A DNA stretch of 64,000 bases, taken from the IMG/VR virus record IMGVR_UViG_3300032240_001991, positions 124,001-188,000 of that record; one strand, 5' to 3'. Shown in pieces: positions 1,977-59,854 of the stretch. Positions within the stretch are counted from its first letter, which is position 1. Every line of letters begins with the position of its first letter. Below the pieces are notes generated by a model. It worked only from the letters and a program-made list of their open reading frames with translations. It searched no databases and was not told where the DNA came from. The translations under genes were made by a program, and so were the position numbers.

Positions 1977-3350
1977 ATGAATATTATTTTAAACACCGAT
2001 AGTTACAAGACCAGCCACTTTGTTCAGTATCCAGAAGGTACTACCAACGTGTTCTCATACATTGAGTCACGCGGTGGCGAATACGATCATACACTGTTTT
2101 TTGGCCTGCAGGTATTTGTTAAGGAATACCTGCTCAAACCAATTACTATTGCAGACATTGATGAAGCTGAAGAAGTTTATCAACTTCACGGCGTGCCGTT
2201 CAATCGTGCGGGATGGGAGTACATCCTTTATCATCACGATGGGTATCTTCCACTACGGATTAAAGCAGTAAAGGAAGGTACTATTGTGCCAACGCACAAT
2301 GTTTTGGTCACTGTAGAAAATACTGATCCTAACCTGCCATGGTTGACTAGCTATGTAGAAACGGCATTGCTTCGCGCAGTGTGGTATCCTACTACTGTAG
2401 CAACTATTAGCCACAGCATCCGCAAGGTTATTGAAGAACGTCTTAAGATCAGCGCAGACACTACTGATGGATTAGACTTTAAACTGCATGACTTTGGTGC
2501 GCGTGGTGTTAGTAGCTTGGAAAGTGCTGCTCTTGGCGGACTTGCACACCTTGTGAACTTCAAAGGCACTGACAACGTGCCCGCATTGATGTATGCTCGT
2601 AAGTATTATGATGAGCGCATGGCAGGGTTCAGCATTCCAGCAGCAGAGCACAGCACTATCACTAGCTGGGGTCGCGAGCATGAAGTAGATGCTTATGCCA
2701 ATATGCTCAAGCAGTTTGCTAAACCTGGCGCACTGGTAGCAGTGGTCAGCGACAGCTACGATCTTTTTAATGCTGTAGAAAACATCTGGGGAGGAGAACT
2801 GCGTCAGCAAATTATTGACAGCGGCGCAACTGTTGTAATTCGTCCAGACTCGGGTAACCCTACAGACATTGTTGCACATACTGCGGTCTTGTTGGACAAG
2901 AAGTTTGGGCATACATTGACCAAGGATGGACATAAGCTGCTCAACAATGTTCGCATTATCCAAGGCGACGGCATCAACGAGCAGAGTATTAAGGATATCC
3001 TTGCTCGTTTGCAGGTTTTGGGTTATAGTGCAGACAACGTAGCGTTTGGTATGGGCGGTGCCTTGCTCCAGCACATGAATCGAGACACACAGAAGTTTGC
3101 TATGAAGGCTTCTGCTGCTAAGGTTAACGGTGAATGGAGAGACGTTTTCAAAGATCCCGTCACGGACTTTGGCAAGCGTAGCAAGAAGGGTCGGTTGGAT
3201 TTGTTTTACAATCATATGAACAATACCTACTCAACTGCTCGCGAAACTGAAGATCGTGTACACTTCCGCATGCTAGAAACAGTTTACGAGAATGGTCAGC
3301 TGGTTCGCGAACAGACGTTGACAGAGATTCGCGATATCGCTAAACTGTAA
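1977..3350 (+). CDS. nadV: nicotinamide phosphoribosyltransferase (NAMPT)
   Basis: TDSYKTSH, LHDFGARG, IPAAEHS, VSDSYD, IRPDSG, IQGDG, FGMGG motifs. Confidence 0.95.
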   Translation: MNIILNTDSYKTSHFVQYPEGTTNVFSYIESRGGEYDHTLFFGLQVFVKEYLLKPITIADIDEAEEVYQLHGVPFNRAGWEYILYHHDGYLPLRIKAVKEGTIVPTHNVLVTVENTDPNLPWLTSYVETALLRAVWYPTTVATISHSIRKVIEERLKISADTTDGLDFKLHDFGARGVSSLESAALGGLAHLVNFKGTDNVPALMYARKYYDERMAGFSIPAAEHSTITSWGREHEVDAYANMLKQFAKPGALVAVVSDSYDLFNAVENIWGGELRQQIIDSGATVVIRPDSGNPTDIVAHTAVLLDKKFGHTLTKDGHKLLNNVRIIQGDGINEQSIKDILARLQVLGYSADNVAFGMGGALLQHMNRDTQKFAMKASAAKVNGEWRDVFKDPVTDFGKRSKKGRLDLFYNHMNNTYSTARETEDRVHFRMLETVYENGQLVREQTLTEIRDIAKL

Positions 3351-6072: not shown

Positions 6073-6101
6073 TTGACCTTAAACTATCTGTAAAGTATAA
6101 T
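6073..6101 (+). promoter_or_regulatory. sigma70-type promoter
   Basis: TTGACC-17-TATAAT followed by AAGGAGG SD. Confidence 0.75.
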
Positions 6102-6124
6102 ACATATACTTAAAAGGAGGATTT

Positions 6125-6457
6125 ATGTCAATTAATAATGCTGAAATTGTATTGCACGAAATGAACCATTACTGCATGAAATCTACCGGAGAACCTCAGG
6201 TTTGGACAGGAAAGAATGCCACCTATCATTGGACTCGCGGTAAGACTACTGATGACGGAATTGTTAACGGAGTTGTGCGAAAGCTAGCTGGGGTTAACGC
6301 TAATGGAGATAAAATCTGGGTAGTTGCAGGGTCTTTCAAGATCACTAGTAACGGAGAAATTCTTCGTTTTACTGGACTTCCTAAGGTTGCACAAAAGATG
6401 ATTGAAGTCGTTGTGCGCTCAGGGTTTAAATCTTTGGAAACTGCAGAGCTCGTTTAA
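6125..6457 (+). CDS. hypothetical phage protein
   Basis: strong SD and promoter; 110 aa. Confidence 0.75.
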   Translation: MSINNAEIVLHEMNHYCMKSTGEPQVWTGKNATYHWTRGKTTDDGIVNGVVRKLAGVNANGDKIWVVAGSFKITSNGEILRFTGLPKVAQKMIEVVVRSGFKSLETAELV

Positions 6458-13095: not shown

Positions 13096-13124
13096 TTGAC
13101 AGCTTGATAAAACTATTATATACT
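13096..13124 (+). promoter_or_regulatory. sigma70-type promoter
   Basis: TTGACA-17-TATACT. Confidence 0.8.
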
Positions 13125-13144
13125 ATTTGCATAGTTTGAAATTA

Positions 13145-13246
13145 AGGATAGGTTCAGCAAACTTCAATAATACTGAAGGACGGAGTTTACTCTGTCAAGG
13201 TGAGTTTCGATTTCTCACCCAAATCAAAAAGTAGGAAACTATCCTG
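13145..13246 (+). ncRNA. structured RNA 1 upstream of the TROVE-like gene (multi-arm, T-loop-like)
   Basis: closing stem AGGATAG/CTATCCT, GTTCAGCAA motif, three internal hairpins including GGTGAG-TTTCGATTT-CTCACC. Confidence 0.6.
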
Positions 13247-13259
13247 TTTTTAATTTTTT

Positions 13260-13320
13260 AGGTTAAGTTCCGCAATTAAACAAGGTTTGTCTGCTAGGAC
13301 GTTAAACTAGTTTTAACCTG
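13260..13320 (+). ncRNA. structured RNA 2, shorter paralogue
   Basis: closing stem AGGTTAA/TTAACCT, GTTCCGCAA motif, ends CCTG like copy 1. Confidence 0.55.
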
Positions 13321-13334
13321 TAAGGAGATTCAAG

Positions 13335-17505: not shown

Positions 17506-17654
17506 AAAATAAAATTGTAGATATTAAGCCTTACCAAAAAAAGCGTCTATTAGAAAAGTTAGCAAAAGAAAAAACCATTATAGTTTTTCCCAAACTTCAT
17601 CTTGTGGTCAAAGACGGGAAGCCGCAATGGGTTCCAAAACCATTTGACAAATAG
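17502..17654 (+). CDS. small basic hypothetical protein (50 aa, not in the ORF track)
   Basis: ATGA overlap with the previous gene; MKNKIVDIKPYQKK...PKPFDK*. Confidence 0.5.
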   Translation: MKNKIVDIKPYQKKRLLEKLAKEKTIIVFPKLHLVVKDGKPQWVPKPFDK

Positions 17655-17677
17655 TTAAATCTAGCTATAATAAATAC
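17644..17677 (+). promoter_or_regulatory. sigma70-type promoter overlapping a TAAATA late box
   Basis: TTGACA-16-TATAAT running into TAAATA. Confidence 0.6.
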
Positions 17678-17739
17678 TTACGTAAACGACCTAATGGCGT
17701 TTACGGGTTTGATTCATCTTACTTTATAAGGAGAATTTT

Positions 17740-18183
17740 ATGAATCAGTTAGTTCGCATTGATACAAATACGTTGAAAGCCCTTAACCGGGCATTTGTTG
17801 GGTTTGATCATTTTTTCTCTAACTTTGAGGAAAGATTCGCTAATCAAATTAATAGTAACTACCCGCCTTACAATCTTTTGAAGCGTGATATGGATACTTA
17901 CGAGATCCAGATCGCAGTTACAGGGTTTGATCCAAGCGAAGTATCTGTTGAGGTAGATCAGAATAATCTGATCGTCAAGGGTGAAATCCAGCGTGATGAA
18001 GAAGTTGAGGTTGAATATCTTCATCGTGGACTCGCTGGCCGCAATTTCACTAAGGTGATTCCTTTGGCAGAGCACATTGAAGTTGGGGATGCAACGATTA
18101 AGAATGGTGTTTTGAGCATTACGCTTAATCGTGTGCTTCCAGAGGCGCTAAAGCCTCGCATTTTGAAGATTAAAGCTCTTTAA
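17740..18183 (+). CDS. small heat-shock protein Hsp20 (IbpA-like)
   Basis: VGFD, NYPPYN, IAVTGF, YLHRGLA.RNF, NGVLSI. Confidence 0.95.
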   Translation: MNQLVRIDTNTLKALNRAFVGFDHFFSNFEERFANQINSNYPPYNLLKRDMDTYEIQIAVTGFDPSEVSVEVDQNNLIVKGEIQRDEEVEVEYLHRGLAGRNFTKVIPLAEHIEVGDATIKNGVLSITLNRVLPEALKPRILKIKAL

Positions 18184-18188
18184 TCACC

Positions 18189-18221
18189 GGGGGTGGGCGG
18201 GTTCCCCGCTCACCCTTTTTT
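18189..18221 (+). terminator. Rho-independent terminator
   Basis: GGGTGGGCGGG/CCCGCTCACCC stem plus T-run. Confidence 0.85.
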
Positions 18222-42083: not shown

Positions 42084-42920
42084 ATGAAAATATACGATTG
42101 TTTTACTTTTTATAACGAGTACGATCTACTAGAAATAAGACTAGAAGAATTGTGGAATACAGTTGATTATTTTGTAATTGGAGAAGCTTCTACTACTTTT
42201 AGAGGGAACCCAAAAAGATTCAACCTAGAAGACAATTGGAGTAGATTTGAAAAATATGCTAGTAAAATTCGATATGTAAGAATAACAGACATGCCAACCG
42301 GGGACAGCAATTGGGCAAGAGAATTCCATCAAAGAGCTGCTCTTGGACGAGGATTGTTTGATATGCAACCTGATGATTTAATTATTGTTAGTGATTGCGA
42401 CGAAATACCTCGAGCAACTGCTGTAGAATATGTCAAAAATGGTCTTGGTGACCACGATCGATATATCATGGCTGTTCCAATTTTTTATTTTAAATTGAAT
42501 AATATAATGACGCATCCGTTGTCTCGACAAATTAATATTAAAATAACAAGAGGAAGAGCATTTACAGATGCTCATCGAGAAAGAGACAGTTGGAATTATA
42601 TTCCAGGAACGATTGAAATTGAACACGGCGGTTGGCACTTTTGTTACTTTGGGGATACTGAATTTGCCCGCACCAAAATACAAAGTTTTTCACATAGCGA
42701 AACAGATGTACCTTGGATAGTAGATAACCTAGATGTAGAAGGCATGGTTGCGGCAGGAAAAGGAATTGGGTGGGATAAAGGAGCAGAAAGATTTGAGCGT
42801 GTTCAAGTTGACGAATACTTCCCAAAGAGTATAACATCCAATATCAACAAATATAAAAACGCCATTGCAGAAGGCGCTACAAGAACAGTTTACGATTTTT
42901 ATCCCAAAGGAAGCAAATAA
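42084..42920 (+). CDS. GT17-family glycosyltransferase
   Basis: YDCFTFYNE, SDCDEIP, GGWHF. Confidence 0.85.
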   Translation: MKIYDCFTFYNEYDLLEIRLEELWNTVDYFVIGEASTTFRGNPKRFNLEDNWSRFEKYASKIRYVRITDMPTGDSNWAREFHQRAALGRGLFDMQPDDLIIVSDCDEIPRATAVEYVKNGLGDHDRYIMAVPIFYFKLNNIMTHPLSRQINIKITRGRAFTDAHRERDSWNYIPGTIEIEHGGWHFCYFGDTEFARTKIQSFSHSETDVPWIVDNLDVEGMVAAGKGIGWDKGAERFERVQVDEYFPKSITSNINKYKNAIAEGATRTVYDFYPKGSK

Positions 42921-43633
42921 TGAGCGATGTAACCTTTTTCCTTACTAGTTGTAAGAGACATGATTTATTAAAGATTTGTTTAGAAAGTTTTGAAGAGTAC
43001 AACACTTATCCAATTGATAGAGCTATTATTATCGAAGATAGTCCGCAAGACATTAGCTGGTGCAAGGATATCCTTAAAAGTATACCTAATGTAGAATTAT
43101 TAAACACAGGCGGCAGACAAGGGCAACTACGCAACATTGACCGATGTTATGCTATGATAGATACTCCTTACGTGTTTCATTGCGAAGATGATTTTCAATT
43201 TACACAAAGTGGGTTTATTGAAGGTAGTAAAACGATTTTGGAAGCTGAACCAACGTGTGTTAATGTATGGTTGCATCCATACGATGCATGTCCAGCTGAG
43301 CACACTTACAAAGAAAAGTTAGAAGTTAACGGAGTAGAATACTACGGGGTTCTTAGCTTAGTTGAGGGAGAAGGGGGGTTGGGATTTACATTCCAACCTA
43401 GCTTACATCGAATAGCAGACTGGAGTCGATGGGGCAACTACAATAGCTTAATAGATCGTATTGCACCTTGGTGTAATAAATTTGATGGTGGACAAGTAGA
43501 GCGCAATATTGCTAGAAATTTTATTATGGAAGGCTATCATTCACGTATCCTTTCTCATCCTGGTAAAATTGGATATTTTGTAAGCACAGGGCATACTAGA
43601 CATGTACCGTTACCTACGCAAGGAGAAATGTAA
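42920..43633 (+). CDS. GT2-like glycosyltransferase
   Basis: TSCKRHDLL, FHCEDD. Confidence 0.7.
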   Translation: MSDVTFFLTSCKRHDLLKICLESFEEYNTYPIDRAIIIEDSPQDISWCKDILKSIPNVELLNTGGRQGQLRNIDRCYAMIDTPYVFHCEDDFQFTQSGFIEGSKTILEAEPTCVNVWLHPYDACPAEHTYKEKLEVNGVEYYGVLSLVEGEGGLGFTFQPSLHRIADWSRWGNYNSLIDRIAPWCNKFDGGQVERNIARNFIMEGYHSRILSHPGKIGYFVSTGHTRHVPLPTQGEM

Positions 43634-44493
43634 TGGCTGGCCGAATTTTTGATTGTTTTCCTTTTTATAATGAATTTGATATTTTAGAAATAAGATTAGA
43701 AGAACTATGGGATACCGTAGACTATTTTGTAATCTCAGAAGCAAATACTACACATCAAAGCAATCCTAAAAACTTTTACCTTAAAGACAATTGGAGTCGT
43801 TTTGAAAAGTATGCCAGTAAAATACGGCATGTTATGGTAGAGGATATGCCTAAGCATTCAGACACCTGGGTAAATGAACGTTTCCAACGGCATGCAATTG
43901 CTAGAGGGCTAACTGATCTTCAGCCAGATGACATCGTGTGTGTTAGCGACTGCGACGAAGTGCCACGCGCAGCGGCACTAGCTGCTATAAGAGACGACAA
44001 TAATGACTATGATCGCTACATCTTAGCAATTCCTCTGCATTACTTTCGATTGAATTACGTAATGACGACTCCTGTGTTCAAACAGAATAACATTATAGTT
44101 ACTAGAGGTAGGGTTTTCACCAATCCTCAAGACGAACGCGCTATTACTTTTAGTACAGGTAATTTACCAATGCATTTTGCTAACGACCAAATTTGTGTCA
44201 TCGAACACGGCGGATGGCATTGGACTTATTTTGGCGATACTGAACACGCAAAAAATAAGATCAGAAACTTTGCGCATGCAGAAACTAATGTACCATGGAT
44301 AATGGACAATCTAGATGTAGACGGAATTGTTAAAGGAAAATACGGTATAGGTTGGGATAAGGGCAATGAACGTTTCGAATATGTTACACTAGACGATTAC
44401 TATCCGCAGTACATCTTAGATAATTTAGAGAAGTATAAGCATATGATAGTAGACGATGCTACTCAATCTGTTTACGACTTTTATCCGGAATAA
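43633..44493 (+). CDS. GT17-family glycosyltransferase
   Basis: FDCFPFYNE, SDCDEVP, GGWHW; close paralogue of 42084. Confidence 0.85.
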   Translation: MAGRIFDCFPFYNEFDILEIRLEELWDTVDYFVISEANTTHQSNPKNFYLKDNWSRFEKYASKIRHVMVEDMPKHSDTWVNERFQRHAIARGLTDLQPDDIVCVSDCDEVPRAAALAAIRDDNNDYDRYILAIPLHYFRLNYVMTTPVFKQNNIIVTRGRVFTNPQDERAITFSTGNLPMHFANDQICVIEHGGWHWTYFGDTEHAKNKIRNFAHAETNVPWIMDNLDVDGIVKGKYGIGWDKGNERFEYVTLDDYYPQYILDNLEKYKHMIVDDATQSVYDFYPE

Positions 44494-44495
44494 TT

Positions 44496-45275
44496 ATGCC
44501 ATCATTTACACATTCCGGCAGTACCGGTGATACATTTAGTAGTTTAGCAGTAGTTAAATGCTTGGGTGGCGGCGACTTTTATCTAAGACTAAATTTTATG
44601 GATAAAGTTGCTCAGCTGATTGGCTGGGGTGGAGCAGGACGACATAGCGGTCGTATGACTCAACAAGACTTTGACTTTTTAGTTCCATTAATGGAAAAGC
44701 AAAGTTATCTAACAAAGTTTGATATCTGGCAAGGTGAACAAGTAGACTACGAACTAGAGAAAGCAGTATTTCATCATAATATCCCTGCATGGCCACGCAA
44801 CTTTGCTAATCAATACGCTACAGCACTAGATTTAGATTTAGAAAAACATTTTAGAACTTTACAAATTGATCCGTATGTTGAAGTAGACAATCCAATATCT
44901 ATACCTGGAAGACCTATTTGTATTTCTAGAAACCAATTCTATCACGAAGGTGAAGAAAATGTTGCTGAAGTTCCTGAGTGGGTTAACTGGATAGAACGTA
45001 ACTTATTAGATCAGGCATTCTTTGTAGGATTACCCGAGGACCGCGATTGGTTTGAAAATACTATGAAAGTTAAGGTACACTATGTTCCAACTAGTGATGC
45101 ACTTGAGCTAGCAAGATTAATTGCAGGATCTAAGATGATGATTGCTAATCAAAGCATGCCGGGCACACTTGCATTGGGAATTGGAACCACATTATGGATT
45201 GAGACTAGAAAAAATACTCCGTTGGATAACAACGAGATTCTTTATCCTTATCGTTCCAACGTGACGTATTTTTAA
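44496..45275 (+). CDS. GT9-like (GT-B) hypothetical protein
   Basis: HSGSTGD, LELARLIAGS...ANQS. Confidence 0.55.
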   Translation: MPSFTHSGSTGDTFSSLAVVKCLGGGDFYLRLNFMDKVAQLIGWGGAGRHSGRMTQQDFDFLVPLMEKQSYLTKFDIWQGEQVDYELEKAVFHHNIPAWPRNFANQYATALDLDLEKHFRTLQIDPYVEVDNPISIPGRPICISRNQFYHEGEENVAEVPEWVNWIERNLLDQAFFVGLPEDRDWFENTMKVKVHYVPTSDALELARLIAGSKMMIANQSMPGTLALGIGTTLWIETRKNTPLDNNEILYPYRSNVTYF

Positions 45276-45323
45276 TATAAAAATTCATCAATGGTGTTTA
45301 TTTGACCAATAAATACCAACATT

Positions 45324-46052
45324 ATGTCAAAACCTAATATTCTTATACCTATGGCAGGATTAGGATCCAGATTCCTGATGAAGGGATTTAGTATCCCAAA
45401 ACCCTTGATTGATATCAATGGTACTCCTATGATTATTAAAGCCATTAGGAGCCTTGGGATAGAAAATGCAACTTACCTATTTGTAATATCAAAAAATGCT
45501 TATACTGAACATATTAAAAAAGAAATATCGGATTCAGTAAATTCTCAATTTATAGAAATTGACTATTTGACAGAAGGCCCTGCTTGTTCAGCTCTTCTTT
45601 TTGAATCACAGATTGATAATGACCAAGAACTTATTGTTGCTAATTGCGATCAGATTATGGAATGGAACGCAGAATCATTTTTGCTTAATGTTCGGCAATA
45701 TGACGGTGCAGTTGTTACATATCATGAAACTACCGATAAAAATAGCTATGCTAGAATTGATGATAGAGGATATGTAGTTAGTATTAAAGAAAAACAGGTA
45801 ATAAGCAACATATCATTAAATGGTGTCCACTATTGGAAAAAAGGTCGCTATTTCGTAGAAAGTGTTAAAAAAATGATTGAGATGGACGATCGAGCACCCA
45901 ACGGCGAATTTTACGTAGGCCCTACTTACAACTACATGATACAAGAAGGTAAAAAGGTAGGAATTTATCATATCCCAAATCAGATGCATCATGCCGTGGG
46001 TGTTCCCGAAGATCTTCAAAAGTATATTAATCACGAGAGAAATAAAAAATGA
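45324..46052 (+). CDS. sugar nucleotidyltransferase-like protein
   Basis: PMAGLGSRF, PKPLI, NCDQ, NGEFYV. Confidence 0.8.
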   Translation: MSKPNILIPMAGLGSRFLMKGFSIPKPLIDINGTPMIIKAIRSLGIENATYLFVISKNAYTEHIKKEISDSVNSQFIEIDYLTEGPACSALLFESQIDNDQELIVANCDQIMEWNAESFLLNVRQYDGAVVTYHETTDKNSYARIDDRGYVVSIKEKQVISNISLNGVHYWKKGRYFVESVKKMIEMDDRAPNGEFYVGPTYNYMIQEGKKVGIYHIPNQMHHAVGVPEDLQKYINHERNKK

Positions 46053-47242
46053 AATTTTTTAGAGATAGATCAGAGATAAAAACTGATCAATATTTTATTG
46101 CTACTTTTCAAATGTCAAGCTCTAAATCACTTAAAGCAGCTGCATGGGATTTAGCTATAGGACAAAGTGTAGGAAATCCTCATGTGAGAAATCGCTGGGA
46201 AAATGATGAGTTGTTTGAAAAGCATAGTTGTATTATTTTAGGTGATGAAAACTATTTAGAAACACTTAAAGCGGGTCTAGTGGAAATTGCGTATCCTGTA
46301 GAAAATACTGATTGGGACACTGACGGTATTTCTCATTTGCTTTGCCAGGTTATGGGAGGTCATGTTGATATTGACATTATTACTAGTTGTCGTTTAGTTA
46401 AACTTGAACTTCCTAGTACTGTTACAAACCATTTCTTTGGCCCTAAATACGGATTTTCTGGAATACGTAAATTAACTGGACAATATAATAAACCACTGTT
46501 TGGCGCAATCATTAAACCTAAAACTGGAATGAGGCCCGAAGTTTTACTAGAAATGGTTAAAGAATTAGTAGACGGCGGTGTTGATTTTATTAAAGAGGAC
46601 GAAATTATGAGTAGTCCTTCTTTTTGTCCATTATATCGTAGAGTAGACTTAATTTCAAATTATCTAGCAAAACAGAGTCGTAAGATCGTATTCTGTCATA
46701 CTATTAATTGCGATCCTCATATACTTATGGATCGTGTAAAAATAATACATCAGCTAGGCGGAACAGGTGTGCATATTAATGTATGGAGCGGATTAGGTTC
46801 TTATAATAGTATTAGAAAATTAGACTTACCTTTATTCCTACATTTTCAAAAGAGTGGTGATAGAACATTTACTGACGCCAGTCATAGATTTAGCATCGCA
46901 TGGCCAGTTATCTGCCAGTTAGCTACACTTATGGGTGTAGACACAATTCAAGCAGGTATGATTGGAGGGTACAGCAACGACGACGAAGTTGAACTAAGGC
47001 AGTCATTGGAAATTTTAAGGAAAGGAAATACCGTTCCTGCATTAAGTTGCGGAATGCATCCTGGGCTAGTTAACCATGTGTCTGATCTTGTTGGTGTAGA
47101 TTTTATGGCCAATGTTGGCGGAGCTGTTCACGGACACCCTGGCGGAACTATTGCAGGGGCACGCGCAATGAGACAGGCAATTGACAAAACTTTTGAATCA
47201 GAGTATCACGAAGCAATTAACAAATGGGGACTAATAAAATGA
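46049..47242 (+). CDS. RuBisCO-like protein (form IV-type)
   Basis: GPKYG..GIR, IIKPKTG, GGVDFIKEDE, SCGMHPG, GGAVHGHPGG..AGARAMRQA. Confidence 0.9.
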   Translation: MKFFRDRSEIKTDQYFIATFQMSSSKSLKAAAWDLAIGQSVGNPHVRNRWENDELFEKHSCIILGDENYLETLKAGLVEIAYPVENTDWDTDGISHLLCQVMGGHVDIDIITSCRLVKLELPSTVTNHFFGPKYGFSGIRKLTGQYNKPLFGAIIKPKTGMRPEVLLEMVKELVDGGVDFIKEDEIMSSPSFCPLYRRVDLISNYLAKQSRKIVFCHTINCDPHILMDRVKIIHQLGGTGVHINVWSGLGSYNSIRKLDLPLFLHFQKSGDRTFTDASHRFSIAWPVICQLATLMGVDTIQAGMIGGYSNDDEVELRQSLEILRKGNTVPALSCGMHPGLVNHVSDLVGVDFMANVGGAVHGHPGGTIAGARAMRQAIDKTFESEYHEAINKWGLIK

Positions 47243-47922
47243 ATCGTATAGAAGACTTACCTTTTAAATTTAATTTTAGAGGAGACTCGCCAACCATTTA
47301 TCAAATGGATGTTAACCAGATGAAATGGAGAGAGGACCTATCCTTTGAAATAAGATTTCACGACGAGAGGGATGATCGAGATTTTCCTTTTCAATGGCCT
47401 GCAAATCCTACAGCTGAAGTTACCGAATGTAACCGATCTGCATTATTAACCAAATTTCTTAAAGTTCGAGATAATGCTAAAGCAATTTTAGAAATAGGTA
47501 TTTGTAGAAATGCAGGAGATTCTTTTACCCATGTTTTTTTAAAGAATAAAAAGCCTGAAACTATATACGTAGGTATTGATTTAGATGATAAAAGTTTTCT
47601 AAATGATCAAAGTAAAAACATACATACAATTCGAGGAACTAGTTCAAGTGTTTTAAAAAACATGAGAACTTGTTACGACCTAGGTATTAAAGAATTTGAT
47701 TTTATTTTTATTGATGGGTGGCATAGCGTAAATCAGGTTTTAATTGATTGGGAATATACTCGTTGGCTATCTAAAGACGGAATAGTTGGATTTCATGACA
47801 CTTCTATGCATCCCGGTCCTCAAAGATTTGTAGCAGCATTAAATCATAATAAATGGAATGTTGAACAAAACGCCTGTTACGAAGATTTTGGAATTGGGTT
47901 TGCTTGGAAAAAATCTAATTAA
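47239..47922 (+). CDS. class I SAM methyltransferase (Methyltransf_24-like)
   Basis: ILEIG, FIDGWHS, GFHDT. Confidence 0.8.
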   Translation: MNRIEDLPFKFNFRGDSPTIYQMDVNQMKWREDLSFEIRFHDERDDRDFPFQWPANPTAEVTECNRSALLTKFLKVRDNAKAILEIGICRNAGDSFTHVFLKNKKPETIYVGIDLDDKSFLNDQSKNIHTIRGTSSSVLKNMRTCYDLGIKEFDFIFIDGWHSVNQVLIDWEYTRWLSKDGIVGFHDTSMHPGPQRFVAALNHNKWNVEQNACYEDFGIGFAWKKSN

Positions 47923-47930
47923 ATAAAAGA

Positions 47931-48671
47931 ATGAAAACTGCAATGCTACTTTCTGGAATGCCAAGATTTAGTGTAGAATTTGATTCTACACTAGAGTATC
48001 TCGTAAACAGCGATATTGATGTTTATATTGCATTTTGGAAAGAGAACTCTATTAAAGATCCAAAAGTTTCTCCTAATTGGCAGGAAGTAGAAACTGAACA
48101 AGACGTCCGTGATCTAATGGAACCTTATCTGCCAGAAAGATATAAAATTAAGCACGTTGAATTGGTAGATCCTTTTGATTTTTGGGCTACCCCTCAAGAC
48201 TACACTCCAATGAATAGTAGTCCCTTTAATACATGGCAGCAATATAATATTTTAAAAATCTGCGATCAACGTCGTAAAGAAAGTGGTATTATATATGACC
48301 TAGTGATACGAGGTCGGCCCGATGTAGGTATTGACCATTATCTTGATTTATCTTTGATTTTAGATATTTTAAAAAAGAACCCAACAACAATTATTACTCC
48401 GGATAATTATAGATGCGGATATCCTCCAGAGGGATTTTGTGATCAGTTTGCTATTGGATTGCCTCTCACTATGACTACGTATTGCGAAGCTGTATACTAT
48501 TACGATGAATTGTATAATCAAGGAATTTTTTATAATCCTGAATGTTTATTACAATCAGTACTTGATAGGCATGGAATTATATATCCTAAAGCTAGCTTTG
48601 AAGTTAAAAGAGGCGGATACTGGCAACCTATAGAACACGGAAGATGGGCTGAATTAAAAATAAAAAGGTAA
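47931..48671 (+). CDS. putative glycosyltransferase-like protein, SGxPR family
   Basis: MKTAMLLSGMPRF...YDLVIRGRPD...DQFAIG...PE. Confidence 0.6.
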   Translation: MKTAMLLSGMPRFSVEFDSTLEYLVNSDIDVYIAFWKENSIKDPKVSPNWQEVETEQDVRDLMEPYLPERYKIKHVELVDPFDFWATPQDYTPMNSSPFNTWQQYNILKICDQRRKESGIIYDLVIRGRPDVGIDHYLDLSLILDILKKNPTTIITPDNYRCGYPPEGFCDQFAIGLPLTMTTYCEAVYYYDELYNQGIFYNPECLLQSVLDRHGIIYPKASFEVKRGGYWQPIEHGRWAELKIKR

Positions 48672-48680
48672 AAATAAAAA

Positions 48681-49493
48681 ATGAAAACTGCAATGATACT
48701 TTCGGGATTTCCTCGATTTAATGAATACTTTGATCTTAATTTTCAAAGTTTGCTAAACAGCGACTTTGAGTGGTACATAGTTTTATGGAAGGGCGACTAT
48801 TCTAATGACGTTAAAATTCCAGCTAACTGGTCAGCTGTTAGAGATGAGCAAGATGCCCGAGATCTTTTAGAACCAAATTTTCCTGCTAACCATAAAATAA
48901 AACATTTAGAATTAGTAGATATAGAAACTTGCCCTCCTATGCCAAGAGAAAAGTATGAAAATGTCTGCTACCATCCTATATCTGCGGTATGGGGACAACA
49001 TGTGTTATTAAAAAAATGTGGTGAAGCTTTAGAAAGATCTGATACAGAATACGATCTAGTTATAAGAACAAGAAGCGATATTGGCATCGATAAAACTTTA
49101 AATCTAGAGATGGTAGTAAAATATTTAAAAGATTACTCAAATGTGTTATTGACCCCCGACACTCATAGATACGGCCATTGGTGGAATCCAGATGCTCCGT
49201 TTCCTTTCTGTGATCAATTTGCGATGGGACTTTACAACGTTATGTTAAAATATTGTAAACAGGTAGACCTTTACGAAAGTTTATACGACAAAGGAGTTCC
49301 GTATGGCCCAGAAATGATGGCGGCGTCGGCTATGCGAGAATATGGATTTGCATGGCCGTATACCGGATTTAATTTAATGAGAAATCACGAATGGTGGGAC
49401 GACGGACTTCGTGTTGACGATGCCAGGTACGCTCCTTTTGGTAAATGGGCTGAAACAACAGTTAAAAGATTAGTTGACAACGAAGATAAATAA
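48681..49493 (+). CDS. putative glycosyltransferase-like protein, SGxPR family
   Basis: tandem paralogue: SGFPRF, YDLVIRTRSD, DQFAMG. Confidence 0.6.
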   Translation: MKTAMILSGFPRFNEYFDLNFQSLLNSDFEWYIVLWKGDYSNDVKIPANWSAVRDEQDARDLLEPNFPANHKIKHLELVDIETCPPMPREKYENVCYHPISAVWGQHVLLKKCGEALERSDTEYDLVIRTRSDIGIDKTLNLEMVVKYLKDYSNVLLTPDTHRYGHWWNPDAPFPFCDQFAMGLYNVMLKYCKQVDLYESLYDKGVPYGPEMMAASAMREYGFAWPYTGFNLMRNHEWWDDGLRVDDARYAPFGKWAETTVKRLVDNEDK

Positions 49494-49502
49494 ACATATA
49501 AT
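49474..49502 (+). promoter_or_regulatory. perfect consensus sigma70 promoter for the tRNA region
   Basis: TTGACA-17-TATAAT. Confidence 0.85.
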
Positions 49503-49534
49503 ACAACCATACTTAAGGAGTATTAGATTACATC

Positions 49535-49666
49535 ATGTCTAAGTCGTATAAACAACATTATTGCACACCAGCCAAGATGGGCATGCCCACCTTTTGGTTT
49601 GCAATTAATAGTCTGTCGTATGATCGCGGACAGGAACCTAAGGGGTCTACTAAGCGGGAAAGTTAA
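49535..49666 (+). CDS. putative attenuator leader peptide (43 aa, not in the ORF track)
   Basis: MSKSYKQHYCTPAKMGMPTFWFAINSLSYDRGQEPKGSTKRES*; AAGGAG 14 nt upstream; lies between promoter and terminator. Confidence 0.6.
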   Translation: MSKSYKQHYCTPAKMGMPTFWFAINSLSYDRGQEPKGSTKRES

Positions 49667-49693
49667 TTAACATAACATACCCAAAAAGCTTTT

Positions 49694-49732
49694 AAGACCC
49701 TAGGATTAAAAACCCTGGGGTTTTTTGTTTTT
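49694..49732 (+). terminator. attenuator-type intrinsic terminator
   Basis: AAGACCCTAGG/CCTGGGGTTTT stem plus T-rich tail; 5' arm also complementary to 49637-49648. Confidence 0.75.
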
Positions 49733-49734
49733 AA

Positions 49735-49846
49735 CAGTGTGAAAATGAGGTAACGAGGACCTCGCGGTGCACTATAAACATGCCGCAAACGGGCGGAACC
49801 GGGGAATAAAATCTGTGGTGAAAACACAGAGAGTCAGAACCGACAG
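49735..49846 (+). ncRNA. unidentified structured RNA
   Basis: GC-rich non-coding segment with hairpins GAGGT/ACCTC, GCGGTG/TGCCGC, TCTGTG/CACAGA. Confidence 0.4.
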
Positions 49847-49874
49847 TTAATAAATATAGGAACAGGAAATTAAA

Positions 49875-50189
49875 ATGCCAGCAACATACACTTGGTCTGT
49901 AATAAAAATAGAAGCAAACCGTGATTACAACGGATATGAAAATGTAGTAAGAAGTGTTAACTGGATGTTAATAGCAGACTTAGACGGAAATAAAAAACCC
50001 CTTGCAGGACAAACAATATTAAGTGATCCGTCAGATCCTTTTATTGAATTTTCGTTATTAACCGAGCAAGATGTGTTAAATTGGGTATTTCAGACAATAG
50101 GGCCAGATAAAAAAAATAAATTAGAAACAATGTTGTCTGAATCTATAGTAGCTTCTCCTACGATAAATCTTCCTCTTCCTTGGATTTAA
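49875..50189 (+). CDS. conserved phage hypothetical protein
   Basis: TYTWSV...FIEFSLLTEQDVLNWV...LPW, a pattern often seen near tail-fibre genes. Confidence 0.7.
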   Translation: MPATYTWSVIKIEANRDYNGYENVVRSVNWMLIADLDGNKKPLAGQTILSDPSDPFIEFSLLTEQDVLNWVFQTIGPDKKNKLETMLSESIVASPTINLPLPWI

Positions 50190-50194
50190 TTTTT

Positions 50195-50278
50195 GGGTAG
50201 CGAGTAGCATTGGCGACTACAGCTGATTGTAAATCAGCCGCTTTGGCATACGGGGTTCGACTCCCTGGCTACCCACCA
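50195..50278 (+). tRNA. tRNA-Tyr(GTA)
   Basis: GGGTAGC/GCTACCC acceptor, GCTGA-TTGTAAA-TCAGC, long variable arm, TTCGA, CCA. Confidence 0.9.
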
Positions 50279-50363
50279 GTCACGTGAACTGTGATGTGTA
50301 ACACAGTATAATCAAACACGGCAGGATTGGCAATGACCTGCTAAAATAAGCATGCTAGATGGT

Positions 50364-50438
50364 AGACATATGGTGTAACGGTAGCACGCACCCAATTTTT
50401 GGGCGCGCCGAGGTGAAGGTTCAACTCCTTCTATGTCG
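50364..50438 (+). ncRNA. tRNA-like element or degenerate tRNA
   Basis: GACATA/TATGTC acceptor, D-arm GTGT..GCAC, T-arm GAAGG-TTCAACT-CCTTC, abnormal anticodon arm, no CCA. Confidence 0.6.
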
Positions 50439-50473
50439 TGCGGATAACCATCAAATAAAAAACCGCACTTTTT
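50438..50473 (+). terminator. putative terminator
   Basis: GTGCGG/CCGCAC stem with a large loop then TTTTT. Confidence 0.5.
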
Positions 50474-51685: not shown

Positions 51686-51759
51686 GCCCAATTAGCTCAA
51701 AAGTAGAGCGCACGACTGATAATCGTAAGACGGAGGAGCGTTACCTCCATTGGGCACCA
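51686..51759 (+). tRNA. tRNA-Ile(GAT)
   Basis: ACGA-CTGATAA-TCGT, atypical T-loop AGCGTTA, CCA. Confidence 0.85.
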
Positions 51760-53359: not shown

Positions 53360-53388
53360 TTGACATAGTAATTTATTGGTGCTATATT
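53360..53388 (+). promoter_or_regulatory. sigma70-type promoter for tRNA-Ser
   Basis: TTGACA-17-TATATT. Confidence 0.65.
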
Positions 53389-57811: not shown

Positions 57812-59854
57812 ATGAAGAAAATATTACTTAATCCGTGGTGGTCACTTTTAACATTAGTAGCCATTGTGCTGGTTAGAATTTGGGATCCTAGTTTTGTTGA
57901 AAGCGTAAGATTAAGATATTTTGATCAATTAGTTACAAGTCGTCCTACTACAGAAATTCCGGTCAATGTTGTAAATGTAGACGAAGCTGCATTAGACAAA
58001 TATGGTCAATGGCCGTTTAGTAGAGATGTGTATGCTGATATAATTAAGGAGCTTTACGCTAGGAACGCAGGTCTAGTAGTTTTTAACGTACTGATGCCCG
58101 AGGCCGATCGTTTTAAGCAAGATGCCGTCCTCAGCAAAACCATGCAGGAATATCCTGTGGTACTACCCACACTAGGCAACAATAAGCAGAAAAATACTAG
58201 CGTAATAGCTCCAGCTACTGTAATAGGCGCTGATCCAAAAGGATTAGTTGCAGAATATCCTGGATTGATCGCTAATGTTCCTGAACTAGAACAGGCTGCT
58301 GTGGGTGTAGGAGTGGTTAATACTTTTCCTGAAATTGACGGCGTTGTTCGTCGTACTCCGTTAGTAATTTATAGTCAAGAGCATTTGAGACCAAGCCTTG
58401 CCCTAGAGGTGTTGCGTGTAGCAGCAGGGGATGCGGCTTTTCAAATCAAGCTAGACGAGAACGGCGTTAATGCTTTACGTATTCCTCAATTTGGTAAAAT
58501 AACCACAGACAATATAAGTAGAGTCTGGATTGATTGGAGTCAACGCCCAAAGAGTTATAGTCTCGCTAATCTTCCTAAAGATTTTAATAAACAGATTGTT
58601 ATAGTGGGTGCCAGTGCGGCAGGTATTGCTAATCCTGTAGCGACTAGTCGAGGTGAAATTTGGCCTCAAGATTTACAAGCATCAGTTATTGGAACTATGC
58701 TAGCCGGTTCTACCATTCAACGACCTGCATACGCTGACGCTTTAGAATTAGGCGTTCTAATTACGGCTGGCATTATATTAATTGTATTAGCAAGGTGGTT
58801 ATATGTAGGTATTGTGGCTACAGTAATTTTTGCTGTTGGCGGTGTATTAGGTAGTATGTATGTTTATCAACACTATCTATTTTTATTTGATGCTACTACT
58901 TTTACCGCAGGCATAATCTTAATTGCATTACACGCTTACATGGTAAAATTTCTAGATGAGTTTTTTCAGAAGCAAATGATTAGAAAACAATTCCAAAGTT
59001 ATCTAAGTCCAGACCTAGTCGCTAAACTAATTAAAGATCCAAGCCTACTAAGATTAGGTGGTGAAGAAAAAGAATTGAGTATTATGTTTACTGATGTTCG
59101 TGGGTTTACTGCAATTAGCGAACACTACGGTAAGAATGTACAAGGGCTAACGTCTATTATGAATCGCTATATGACTGCAATGACTAAAAGAATACTAGAG
59201 AATGACGGAACTCTAGACAAATATATTGGCGATGCTCAAATGGCATTTTGGAACGCTCCGCTTGATGAATCTAAGCACTGCAAAGATGCTGTTAAAAGTG
59301 CCTTAGATATGTTAGGAGACCTAGAGAAATTTAACAAGGAAGTTGAACTAGAAGGTGTTCCTCCTTTTGGTATGGGTATTGGAATTAATACCGGTGTAGT
59401 TGTAGTAGGTAATATGGGGTCTGAACAAAGGTTTGATTATACCTGCTTAGGTGACGCAGTAAATCTTGCTAGTAGACTTGAAGGACAAAGCAAAAACTAC
59501 GGTGTCCTAATTGTATTAGGCCCGGTTACTGCTGATCGTGTTAAAGACGAATACCAAGTTATAGAACTTGATTGCATTGCAGTCAAAGGAAAAACACAGG
59601 GTGTAAACATATTTACTGTGTTAGGTCCAATAGGTTGCGTAAGTCAAGAAGATGTAGACTTGCATAATCAAATGCTGTCTTATTATAGGGCAACAGATTT
59701 TAATACTGCAATAATATTATGTAATTCGTTAAAAGGAAAACTTAACGGATTAATGGATCAGTATTACGACATGTGGATGCAACGTTGCGAAGATATGAAG
59801 TGGACTACCTTATCAGAAGACTGGGACGGAGTATATCGAGCTACTTCAAAATAA
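57812..59854 (+). CDS. CHASE2-domain class III adenylate/guanylate cyclase
   Basis: GQWPFSR CHASE2, TM helices, FTDVRGFT, DKYIGDA, GDAVNLASRLE. Confidence 0.93.
   Translation: MKKILLNPWWSLLTLVAIVLVRIWDPSFVESVRLRYFDQLVTSRPTTEIPVNVVNVDEAALDKYGQWPFSRDVYADIIKELYARNAGLVVFNVLMPEADRFKQDAVLSKTMQEYPVVLPTLGNNKQKNTSVIAPATVIGADPKGLVAEYPGLIANVPELEQAAVGVGVVNTFPEIDGVVRRTPLVIYSQEHLRPSLALEVLRVAAGDAAFQIKLDENGVNALRIPQFGKITTDNISRVWIDWSQRPKSYSLANLPKDFNKQIVIVGASAAGIANPVATSRGEIWPQDLQASVIGTMLAGSTIQRPAYADALELGVLITAGIILIVLARWLYVGIVATVIFAVGGVLGSMYVYQHYLFLFDATTFTAGIILIALHAYMVKFLDEFFQKQMIRKQFQSYLSPDLVAKLIKDPSLLRLGGEEKELSIMFTDVRGFTAISEHYGKNVQGLTSIMNRYMTAMTKRILENDGTLDKYIGDAQMAFWNAPLDESKHCKDAVKSALDMLGDLEKFNKEVELEGVPPFGMGIGINTGVVVVGNMGSEQRFDYTCLGDAVNLASRLEGQSKNYGVLIVLGPVTADRVKDEYQVIELDCIAVKGKTQGVNIFTVLGPIGCVSQEDVDLHNQMLSYYRATDFNTAIILCNSLKGKLNGLMDQYYDMWMQRCEDMKWTTLSEDWDGVYRATSK

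What the first reader, a model, noticed from the sequence alone, without database searches (positions are those of the whole stretch)
49474..49732. Near-all-amino-acid leader peptide attenuator in front of the phage tRNA region
Seen: a perfect TTGACA-17-TATAAT promoter, an AAGGAG, and a 43-codon ORF (49535-49666). Its first 34 codons contain 19 of the 20 amino acids (only Val is missing), and the ORF uses 31 different codons. An intrinsic terminator follows at 49694-49732. Codons 35-38 (CCTAAGGGGTCT, 49637-49648) can pair with the terminator 5' arm AGACCCTAGG, with a 2-nt bulge, giving an antiterminator. A possible pause hairpin CTGTC/GACAG lies just before it. Known: classical attenuators (trp, his) use runs of one amino acid. 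Inference: this leader samples nearly the whole tRNA pool. A stall at any depleted or cleaved tRNA (starvation, host anticodon nuclease) would free the antiterminator and switch on the downstream phage tRNAs. All eight amino acids served by those tRNAs occur in the leader. Caveats: the SD spacing is long (14 nt), and a 43-mer can be diverse by chance.
Basis: partly seen in the sequence, partly recalled or inferred. Interest (0 to 1): 0.92.

Follow-up and report, generated by a model that had tools for sequence, protein, structure and literature searches.

The report
Phage leader-ORF transcription attenuator candidate
A jumbo phage carries a strong promoter, a short open reading frame and a terminator with a conserved competing hairpin, which looks like a translation-sensing switch placed ahead of a small gene and several phage tRNA genes; the claim that it samples all amino acids is not supported.

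Summary
These are a 12/12 sigma-70 promoter, AAGGAG 14 nt before the ATG, a 43-codon ORF, an intrinsic terminator, and a segment inside the ORF that pairs with the terminator's 5' arm.

Only one homologous leader could be found, L003, on a 1.5-kb Logan contig. It keeps the promoter -35, the ORF (in-frame ATG, 3-nt indels, same stop position), the terminator and the antiterminator. Compensatory changes link all three strands.

The antiterminator is far beyond chance: 0/500 and 1/500 shuffles, 6/1000 in an evolutionary null, and z = -5 against 30 other terminator-like hairpins.

The peptide sequence itself is not under protein-level selection. Substitutions fall 15/15/17 over codon positions, and codon usage is atypical.

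The headline claim fails. Finding 19 amino acids in 43 residues has P about 0.10, and the homolog has 18 of 44 (P about 0.3).

The leader is followed by a 142-nt spacer and a DUF7936 gene before tRNA-Tyr. tRNA-Ser has its own promoter.

Best reading: a ribosome-mediated attenuator that senses general translation capacity. It is a new variant of a known kind, supported by only two sequences and no experiment.

The parts
49474..49502 (+). Sigma-70 type promoter TTGACA-17-TATAAT. The -35 lies in the last codons of the upstream gene; the expected transcript start is about 49509.
   Evidence: In L003 the -35 block is 30 of 31 nt identical, including all synonymous sites of 8 codons, while the gene-wide synonymous difference is 0.72. 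The L003 -10 is weaker: TAACAT at 17 nt.
49515..49520 (+). Shine-Dalgarno-like AAGGAG, 14 nt before the ATG (AAGGA at 13 nt in L003)
   Evidence: Strong SD motifs of this phage's genes mostly sit 4-10 nt from the start codon, so this spacing is atypical, although it is conserved.
49535..49666 (+). Leader ORF, 43 codons plus stop. It appears translated but is not constrained as a protein.
   Evidence: The frame is open in both homologs (null P = 0.049), the ATG is shifted by 3 nt in frame and both internal indels are 3 nt. Substitutions fall 15/15/17 by codon position, 16 of 42 residues are identical, and the codon-usage score is 5.8 against 20.5 +/- 6 for real genes. No homolog was found among 1.8 billion representative proteins or in phage genomes.
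49546..49621 (+). Conserved long hairpin inside the ORF (codons 4-29). The 12-nt block TCGTATAAACAA at its 5' base is invariant.
   Evidence: Both RNAs fold better than shuffles (z = -2.9 and -4.4). Two adjacent pairs changed on both sides (A-U to G-C and U-A to C-G).
49637..49655 (+). Antiterminator 5' strand, codons 35-41: 49637-39, helix A 49642-48, helix B 49652-55
49688..49704 (+). Antiterminator 3' strand: helix B 49688-91 and helix A plus extension 49695-49704. It takes 10 of the 11 nt of the terminator 5' arm.
   Evidence: Pair probabilities in the nascent RNA are 0.9-1.0, except 0.57 for the terminal G-U pair of helix A.
49694..49732 (+). Intrinsic terminator: stem 49694-49704/49714-49724, 9-nt loop, T-run to 49732
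   Evidence: It is conserved in L003 with two pairs changed on both sides and one on one side.
49733..49874 (+). Spacer of 142 nt, relatively G+C-rich and moderately structured. No promoter-like site of 10/12 or better.
   Evidence: z = -2.3
49875..50189 (+). First gene downstream (DUF7936, 104 aa), the candidate regulated gene
50195..50439 (+). tRNA-Tyr(GUA), 5 nt after the DUF7936 stop, and tRNA-Lys(UUU). These are candidate regulated genes.

Best explanation
The element is a ribosome-mediated (leader-ORF) transcription attenuator.

Proposed sequence of events:
1. Host RNA polymerase starts at the consensus promoter, near 49509. Polymerases arriving from the upstream operon cross the same leader.
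2. As the RNA emerges, the ORF segment 49637-49655 pairs with 49688-49704. This sequesters the terminator's 5' arm, so the default is read-through into DUF7936, tRNA-Tyr, tRNA-Lys(UUU) and possibly on to 51840.
3. If a ribosome translates the 43-codon ORF on time, it occupies codons 31-43 and the stop at 49664. It then covers or unwinds the antiterminator 5' strand while the polymerase makes the 3' arm. The terminator forms and a roughly 225-nt RNA is released.
4. Anything that delays or prevents translation of the leader raises read-through. Examples are poor initiation, stalling at any codon, tRNA loss or ribosome inhibition.

Shown in silico: the promoter, the two mutually exclusive folds, their conservation, and maintenance of the ORF without protein-level constraint.

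Inferred: that the ORF is translated, that the ribosome is the factor that decides between the folds, and that the downstream genes depend on read-through.
For: - Homolog L003 aligns through the whole leader at about 63% identity, although synonymous sites of the neighbouring gene are saturated (pS = 0.72). The leader is therefore under constraint.
- The nascent RNA folds into the antiterminator in both sequences, with the same three-tier design. Pair probabilities for helices A and B are 0.93-1.0, apart from 0.57 for the terminal G-U pair of helix A in the window.
- The energy gained when the 5' arm is added is -12.1 kcal/mol in the window (0/500 shuffles) and -10.8 in L003 (1/500).
- Only 6 of 1000 simulated divergences of the window leader keep such pairing with the real L003 arm.
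- Among 31 terminator-like hairpins in the window, this one has the strongest such upstream complement (z = -5.0). The next is -3.6, inside a gene, and clear gene-end terminators score z >= +0.5.
- Three-way covariation: one alignment column of the ORF strand, its partner in the 5' arm and that partner's partner in the 3' arm read G/C/G in the window and U/A/U in L003. Helix B changes A-U to G-C.
- ORF: the frame stays open (null P = 0.049), the ATG is displaced by exactly 3 nt, and both internal indels are 3 nt. The stop lies 8 nt after helix B's 5' strand in both sequences.
- No promoter-like site of 10/12 or better lies between the terminator and 51086 on the + strand.
- No Rfam family explains the RNA.
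Against: - Only two sequences exist, so covariation cannot be tested formally.
- The SD-to-ATG distance (14 and 13 nt) is outside the 4-10 nt mostly seen for strong SDs in this phage.
- Frame 2 is also stop-free in both sequences, although that is not unlikely by chance (P = 0.26).
- Substitutions are spread evenly over codon positions, and codon usage is as poor as in a non-coding frame. This is what an untranslated structured RNA would also show.
- No anti-antiterminator was found, and no conserved pause hairpin.
- The antiterminator strand ends 16 nt before the stop codon. A ribosome parked at the stop covers helix B but only the edge of helix A. The folding model, which ignores sterics, still lets helix A form.
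- Gene callers in three assemblies never called the ORF.
- This phage also has ordinary 'perfect promoter, one gene, terminator' units, such as 17644-18217.
Confidence: 0.5

Rival explanations
1. It is an autonomous small gene. The roughly 225-nt RNA made from the consensus promoter and ended constitutively by the terminator is itself the product. That product would be a structured small regulatory RNA, possibly also encoding the 43-aa peptide. The alternative pairing would serve folding or stability, or be tolerated, and the downstream genes would be transcribed by other means, for example phage-specific promoters not recognisable here.
For: - The RNA is significantly structured in both homologs (z = -2.9 and -4.4), with compensatory pairs in the long hairpin.
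- Constraint is even over codon positions and codon usage is non-genic.
- An invariant 12-nt block could be a seed.
- An A/U-rich stretch precedes a strong terminator.
- The phage has other monocistronic promoter-to-terminator units and another promoter-driven structured non-coding RNA at 13131-13262.
- At equilibrium the terminator fold is favoured: by 8.8 kcal/mol in L003 and 0.4 in the window.
Against: - ORF maintenance with an in-frame ATG shift and 3-nt indels is unlikely for a pure non-coding RNA.
- The antiterminator complementarity is conserved by selection and is unique among the window's terminators. A constitutive terminator has no need for it.
- The complement of the 12-mer is not enriched in the window: 13 matches against 11.5 expected.
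- No peptide homologs exist.
Confidence: 0.3
2. It is a terminator/antiterminator switch set by a trans-acting factor other than the ribosome. A protein, a small RNA, a tRNA or a metabolite would bind the conserved hairpin domain or the G-run. The ORF would be incidental or secondary.
For: - There is a conserved structured domain upstream of the expression platform, with invariant loop and linker blocks.
- The atypical SD spacing weakens the case for efficient translation.
- The alternative folds are real.
Against: - The upstream hairpin (49546-49621) does not overlap or compete with the antiterminator strand, so ligand binding there has no obvious route to the switch.
- No T-box, riboswitch or other Rfam match was found, even at E <= 10.
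- ORF maintenance and the fixed stop-codon position are left unexplained.
Confidence: 0.12
3. The leader has been selected to contain nearly every amino acid, so that depletion or cleavage of any single tRNA is sensed.
For: - The window peptide has 19 of 20 amino acids and the homolog 18 of 20. Both are in the upper part of the chance distribution.
- The leader is rich in codons that are rare in phage genes: TCG twice, CGG, CCC, CTG, CGC.
- A switch without an anti-antiterminator would indeed respond to a stall at most positions.
Against: - P = 0.10 for 19 amino acids in 43 residues and P = 0.31-0.35 for 18 in 44. The P = 0.02 for the first 34 codons rests on a cut chosen after seeing the sequence.
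- The two peptides share descent, so they are not independent.
- Asp is lost in the homolog and Val is absent from both.
- Only 16 of 42 positions are conserved, and nothing suggests that composition rather than RNA structure is maintained.
Confidence: 0.08

Closest known systems
Classical leader-peptide attenuators of enterobacterial amino-acid operons (trpL, hisL, pheL, thrL, leuL, ilvL; Rfam Trp_leader, His_leader and related families). The comparison rests on established knowledge.
   Same: Both have a promoter-proximal short ORF, an intrinsic terminator before the regulated genes, and an antiterminator that shares a strand with the terminator. In both, the ribosome's position on the ORF is thought to choose the fold, and full translation favours termination.
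   Different: - There is no run of codons for one amino acid.
- No region 1:2 anti-antiterminator or pause hairpin was found, so absence of translation should give read-through rather than superattenuation.
- The ORF is 43 codons with a long internal hairpin.
- The stop codon lies downstream of the antiterminator strand instead of just before it.
- The genes downstream are a DUF7936 gene and tRNA genes, in a phage.
- No Rfam match was found.
Ribosome-mediated attenuators and sensory uORFs that report general translation stress: bmrB-bmrCD of Bacillus subtilis (PMC4191407), the vmlR leader (PMC9226507), and toiL of E. coli (PMC12121999)
   Same: A short ORF with no amino-acid-specific control codons has its translation status coupled to alternative RNA structures. 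The response is to many kinds of ribosome stalling. In bmrB, rare codons influence the decision (PMC4191407); the leader here is also rich in rare codons.
   Different: - Those systems control antibiotic-resistance or toxin-antitoxin genes in bacteria and were shown by experiment.
- toiL acts through RBS occlusion and Rho rather than an intrinsic terminator.
- Here the candidate output is phage tRNA genes, there is no sequence similarity, and nothing has been tested.
Small stable RNAs encoded in the phage T4 tRNA gene region (species 1 and 2, RNA C and D). Recalled from general knowledge and not checked here.
   Same: Both are small structured RNAs of unknown function encoded next to phage tRNA genes.
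   Different: The T4 RNAs are processed from the tRNA precursor transcripts. They are not known to have their own consensus promoter, an ORF or a terminator/antiterminator pair. No sequence comparison was made.
Strong dedicated promoters of phage tRNA genes used against tRNA-cleaving defences (T5-like tRNA-Tyr against retron-Eco7 PtuAB; phage tRNA-Lys against PrrC; PMC11555353)
   Same: A very strong host-type promoter lies ahead of phage tRNA-Tyr and tRNA-Lys genes.
   Different: In those phages high constitutive expression is the point and no attenuator is described. Here a terminator with a conserved antiterminator intervenes.

Membership tests
Leader-peptide (ribosome-mediated) transcription attenuator | Short ORF with start codon and ribosome-binding site close to the transcript start | tested here: inconclusive
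   An ATG and an AAGGAG/AAGGA motif are present in both homologs, but 14 and 13 nt apart. Strong SDs of the phage's genes mostly sit 4-10 nt from the start. The frame is maintained.
Leader-peptide (ribosome-mediated) transcription attenuator | Intrinsic terminator between the leader ORF and the regulated genes | tested here: met
   Stem of 11 pairs plus T-run at 49694-49732, conserved with compensatory changes in L003.
Leader-peptide (ribosome-mediated) transcription attenuator | Antiterminator mutually exclusive with the terminator | tested here: met
   49637-49655 pairs with 49688-49704. Supported by 0/500 and 1/500 shuffles, 6/1000 in the divergence null, and z = -5 against the other terminators.
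Leader-peptide (ribosome-mediated) transcription attenuator | ORF overlaps the switching strand, so that ribosome position selects the fold | tested here: met
   The antiterminator 5' strand is codons 35-41. The stop codon lies 8 nt after helix B's 5' strand in both homologs. Whether a ribosome at the stop blocks helix A is inferred from footprint size, not computed.
Leader-peptide (ribosome-mediated) transcription attenuator | Read-through depends on translation of the leader | not testable with these tools
   This needs reporter fusions, coupled in vitro transcription-translation, or Ribo-seq and Term-seq.
Amino-acid-specific attenuator (trp/his type) | Cluster of control codons for the amino acid related to the regulated genes | tested here: not met
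   No codon runs are present. The only hint is the invariant TCG TAT AAA CAA block (single Tyr and Lys codons) ahead of tRNA-Tyr and tRNA-Lys(UUU).
Amino-acid-specific attenuator (trp/his type) | Anti-antiterminator (1:2) hairpin that also acts as pause signal | tested here: not met
No conserved partner for 49637-49655 exists upstream. Only a 3-bp CGC/GCG helix is conserved.
Described RNA families (Rfam 15, including T-box, riboswitches and the Trp/His/Leu/Thr leaders) | Match to a covariance model at or near the gathering score | tested here: not met
   No hit at the gathering threshold. The best hits at E <= 10 score 21 bits against thresholds of 59-60.
Trans-acting small RNA gene | Own promoter and terminator, and conserved structure, without a maintained ORF | tested here: inconclusive
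   Promoter, terminator and structure are met. The ORF is nevertheless maintained. No target enrichment was seen in the window, and host targets are not testable.
Conserved small protein gene | Purifying selection on the amino-acid sequence, genic codon usage, and homologs | tested here: not met
   Substitutions fall 15/15/17 by codon position, against 78/51/137 in the neighbouring gene. The codon score lies below 99.6% of genic windows. There are no Pfam, PHROG or protein homologs.

The most novel reading that the evidence does not exclude
The invariant codon block Ser-Tyr-Lys-Gln (TCG TAT AAA CAA, codons 4-7) may be the control point of a feedback attenuator matched to the two tRNA genes that come first downstream, tRNA-Tyr(GUA) and tRNA-Lys(UUU). 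Host tRNA-Tyr and tRNA-Lys are the substrates of known anti-phage nucleases: retron-Eco7 PtuAB and PrrC (PMC11555353). Their loss would stall ribosomes early in the leader and leave the antiterminator intact. Read-through would then switch on the phage's replacement tRNAs, which in turn would restore termination. That would be a phage counter-defence circuit that senses tRNA cleavage through translation.
Probability: 0.1. Interest if true: 0.9.

Novelty: new variant of a known kind. Interest (0 to 1): 0.55.

Why it matters
Phage tRNA genes are now linked to escape from tRNA-cleaving defences, and to compensation for host tRNA loss. How phages regulate these genes is almost unstudied. A phage-borne attenuator that reads the cell's translation capacity and feeds into tRNA genes would be the first regulatory link between translation failure and phage tRNA supply. 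It would extend leader-ORF attenuation from bacterial biosynthetic and resistance operons to viruses. It is directly testable with laboratory E. coli components, because the promoter and terminator are of the standard host type. If it is only a small RNA gene, it is still a conserved, structured phage RNA of unknown function beside a tRNA cluster.

Tried and rejected
- **Search for more homologs.** These gave only the source contig itself, chance hits, or one real relative:
  - blastn of 48600-50300 against 50,697 phage records found only tRNA-Tyr matches.
  - tblastn with the peptide and with DUF7936 found nothing useful.
  - phmmer of the peptide against 1.8 billion representatives returned five long, unrelated proteins.
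  - Protein searches with both neighbouring genes found self plus P0003.
  - Five IMG/VR scans returned only self or unrelated loci. L006 and L008 are chance matches.
  - Two metagenome scans found nothing.
  - One genome scan gave five chance matches.
  - nhmmer with the two-sequence profile found no paralog in the window.
  - P0009 is a distant paralog with no leader.
  - L015 starts inside the terminator and is identical.
- **T-box or riboswitch idea.** Rejected: no Rfam match and no suitable bulge.
- **Pause hairpin CTGTC/GACAG.** Rejected: not conserved.
- **Alternative start codons nearer the SD.** None is in frame in both sequences (read).
- **Small RNA seed targets in the window.** Not enriched.
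- **Enrichment of codons read by the phage tRNAs.** Marginal.
- **Failed scripts.** A dinucleotide-shuffle script and a slow simulation timed out and were rerun in simpler form.
- **L003 terminator probabilities.** The values printed used pair indices off by one and are not used.
Full report
**Source and context**

The window is part of IMGVR_UViG_3300032240_001991, a 326,658-bp uncultivated viral contig. Window position equals contig position minus 124,000.

The neighbourhood is a long run of + strand genes from 42084 to 49493. It includes a RuBisCO-like protein, a methyltransferase and three paralogs of PHROG 13607. Next come the element under study, a 104-aa DUF7936 gene (49875-50189), and tRNA genes interspersed with protein genes.

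**The observation**

Reading the sequence confirms each listed item:
- TTGACA at 49474-79, 17 nt, TATAAT at 49497-502.
- AAGGAG at 49515-20.
- ATG at 49535 and stop at 49664-66.
- A terminator whose stem is 49694-49704/49714-49724, with a 9-nt loop and a T-run to 49732.

The consensus scanner lists the promoter as the only 12/12 site in 44-56 kb. It misses the terminator only because its loop limit is 8 nt; RNAfold predicts the terminator.

A window-wide scan shows that the phage uses several near-consensus host-type promoters in intergenic positions: 791, 6073, 13096, 15223, 17644, 49474 and 53360. The promoter is therefore credible and belongs to a family.

The peptide has 19 amino acids in its first 34 residues and uses 31 different codons.

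**A homolog**

No relative of the 43-aa peptide exists in phage genomes or among 1.8 billion representative proteins. Gene callers never called the ORF.

The upstream 270-aa gene has one relative, 66% identical, on a 1,469-bp Logan contig (L003). The 280 nt after that gene align with the window leader from the -35 to beyond the terminator.

Synonymous sites of the neighbouring gene are saturated (pS = 0.72), whereas the leader differs at only about 37% of positions. The leader as a whole is therefore under selection. The -35 block is 30 of 31 nt identical, including every synonymous site of the last eight codons of the upstream gene. This argues for a DNA-level constraint, namely the promoter.

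All further attempts to find homologs failed. Everything comparative below rests on two sequences.

**Is the ORF real?**

For translation:
- L003 has a 44-codon ORF in the same frame.
- Its ATG is displaced by exactly 3 nt, and the two internal indels are both 3 nt.
- The stop is at the equivalent place.
- If the variable columns are kept but the replacement bases randomised, the frame stays open in only 4.9% of trials.

Against a protein-coding function:
- Differences are spread 15/15/17 over codon positions, against 78/51/137 in the neighbouring gene.
- Only 16 of 42 residues are identical.
- The codon-usage log-odds is 5.8 (4.6 in L003), against 20.5 +/- 6 for real 43-codon windows of this phage.

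Two further points weaken the case for translation. Frame 2 is also stop-free in both sequences, although that happens by chance 26% of the time and frame 2 has no start codon. The SD-like motif lies 14 and 13 nt from the ATG, whereas strong SDs of the phage's genes mostly sit 4-10 nt away.

Taken together, the frame appears to be kept open and initiable while the peptide sequence is free. That is the signature expected of a regulatory leader ORF. It is not what a small protein gene would show.

**RNA structure**

Both leaders fold better than shuffled controls (z = -2.9 and -4.4).

The consensus fold has a long hairpin inside the ORF, at window 49546-49621. Two adjacent pairs in it changed on both sides. 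The terminator has two more such pairs.

**The antiterminator**

Folding growing transcripts shows the same event in both homologs. As soon as the terminator's 5' arm is out but the 3' arm is not, the minimum-energy structure pairs that arm with the end of the ORF.

The design has three tiers in both sequences:

| Tier | Window | L003 |
|---|---|---|
| Extension | 49637-39 : 49702-04 | 1334-36 : 1397-99 |
| Helix A | 49642-48 : 49695-49701 | 1338-44 : 1390-96 |
| Helix B | 49652-55 : 49688-91 | 1349-52 : 1383-86 |

Pair probabilities for helices A and B in the nascent RNA are 0.93-1.0, apart from 0.57 for the terminal G-U pair of helix A in the window.

Statistical support:
- The energy gain on adding the arm is -12.1 kcal/mol in the window (0 of 500 shuffles reach it) and -10.8 in L003 (1 of 500).
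- The window's upstream 60 nt were given the observed number of random substitutions and joined to the real L003 arm. Only 6 of 1000 reach the observed gain.
- Among 31 terminator-like hairpins in the window, this one has the strongest such upstream complement (z = -5.0). Recognisable gene-end terminators score z >= +0.5.
- One column of the ORF strand, its partner in the 5' arm and that partner's partner in the 3' arm read G/C/G in the window and U/A/U in L003. Helix B changes A-U to G-C.

At full length the two folds are nearly isoenergetic in the window: -58.6 against -59.0 kcal/mol, with ensemble shares of about 0.3 and 0.67. In L003 the terminator is favoured by 8.8 kcal/mol.

I regard the terminator/antiterminator alternative as the best-established part of the finding.

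**Amino-acid diversity**

| Case | Real proteins of the window | Random codons |
|---|---|---|
| 34-residue windows reaching 19 amino acids | 1.9% | 1.7% |
| 43-residue windows reaching 19 amino acids | 10% | 10% |
| 44-residue windows reaching 18 amino acids | 31% | 35% |

The 34-codon boundary was chosen after seeing the sequence. For the whole peptide the figure is 10%. The homolog has 18 amino acids in 44 residues and lacks Asp and Val, which 31-35% of windows match.

Codons readable by the nine phage tRNAs make up 44% of the leader, against 31.5% of phage genes. That gives P = 0.05 in the window and P = 0.16 in L003.

The headline idea is thus not supported as a selected property. What can be said is that the leader contains many codons that are rare in this phage. 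These include TCG (1.8 per thousand) twice, one of them inside the invariant 12-nt block.

**Mechanism**

No conserved partner competes for the antiterminator's 5' strand; only a 3-bp CGC/GCG helix is shared. In the absence of a ribosome the RNA should therefore read through.

The strand is codons 35-41, and the stop codon lies 8 nt beyond helix B in both homologs. A ribosome with the stop in its A site protects roughly 49648-49679. This inference comes from the usual footprint size, and the folding program cannot model the sterics. Such a ribosome would cover helix B and the edge of helix A. A ribosome on codons 31-40 covers all of it.

Timely translation would therefore prevent the antiterminator and allow termination. 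Late, stalled or absent translation would give read-through.

The output unit would be DUF7936, tRNA-Tyr (5 nt after its stop), tRNA-Lys(UUU), a 368-aa gene, tRNA-Phe, a probable tRNA-Ile and tRNA-Lys(CUU), ending before the convergent gene at 51844. No promoter-like site of 10/12 or better lies on the + strand between the terminator and 51086. tRNA-Ser has its own promoter at 53360, so the switch cannot govern all the tRNAs.

**Rivals**

- An autonomous small RNA or small gene remains a serious alternative. The phage has ordinary units of perfect promoter, one gene and terminator (17644 to 18217, Hsp20). It also has another promoter-driven structured RNA (13131-13262), and the even codon-position pattern fits an RNA.
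- A switch set by a protein, RNA or ligand is possible. However, the conserved hairpin does not touch the switching strand, and no Rfam model matches.

**Comparison with known systems**

In logic the element resembles classical leader-peptide attenuation. It lacks control-codon runs and the 1:2 hairpin.

It is closer to the ribosome-mediated attenuators and sensory uORFs that report general translation stress: bmrB-bmrCD (PMC4191407), vmlR (PMC9226507) and toiL (PMC12121999). A 'multipurpose' stall sensor is therefore an existing concept.

My literature searches found no description of such an element in a phage or ahead of tRNA genes. Phage tRNA-Tyr and tRNA-Lys are known to counter retron-Eco7 PtuAB and PrrC when driven by a strong promoter (PMC11555353). 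This makes the Tyr-Lys codons in the invariant block, and the order of the first two tRNA genes, an intriguing but untested coincidence.

**Verdict**

The features are real. The terminator/antiterminator pair and a maintained but unconstrained ORF are supported beyond chance. The all-amino-acid interpretation is not.

I put 0.5 on a ribosome-mediated attenuator. It would be a new variant of a known kind. The main weaknesses are that only two sequences are available, the SD spacing is atypical, and there are no experiments.

Noticed in passing
window 13096-13334: A TTGACA-17-TATACT promoter is followed by a roughly 130-nt non-coding RNA candidate (13131-13262). It has a long closing stem, four internal hairpins including a T-arm-like one, and a T-run (z = -4.0). 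It lies just upstream of a DUF2828/DUF7788 gene, annotated 'RNA-binding protein' as PHROG 850. The layout recalls Ro-type protein plus Y-RNA pairs. No Rfam hit.
   Followed up: partly
window 51686-51756 (+): Rfam's tRNA model scores 57 bits here, but ARAGORN reports nothing. The anticodon loop reads CUGAUAA, suggesting tRNA-Ile(GAU) with an unusual T-loop. The window would then hold nine tRNA genes, not eight.
   Followed up: partly
window 53360-53388: A TTGACA-17-TATATT promoter with a TG extension lies directly in front of tRNA-Ser (53413). At least one phage tRNA therefore has its own host-type promoter.
   Followed up: no
window 17644-18217: This is the second perfect 12/12 promoter in the window (TTGACA-16-TATAAT). 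It is followed by a roughly 60-nt leader with a hairpin, an Hsp20-family gene (17740-18183) and a very strong terminator (18189-18217, -23.9 kcal/mol). Together they form a monocistronic unit.
   Followed up: no
window 6073-6127 and 49474-49520: The two promoters share an extended module after the -10 (TATAATACA ... ATACTTAA..GGAG). In the first, the ATG follows the SD by 4 nt; in the leader, by 14 nt.
   Followed up: no
window 1977-3350, 46049-47242, 57812-59854: Unusual auxiliary genes for a phage: nicotinamide phosphoribosyltransferase, a RuBisCO large-subunit-like protein, and a CHASE2-adenylate/guanylate cyclase.
   Followed up: no
window 49733-49874: The spacer between the terminator and the DUF7936 gene is relatively G+C-rich and forms three or four hairpins (z = -2.3). 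One of them also reads as a terminator-like site on the minus strand (49830-49812). Its function is unknown, and L003 ends too early to test conservation.
   Followed up: partly
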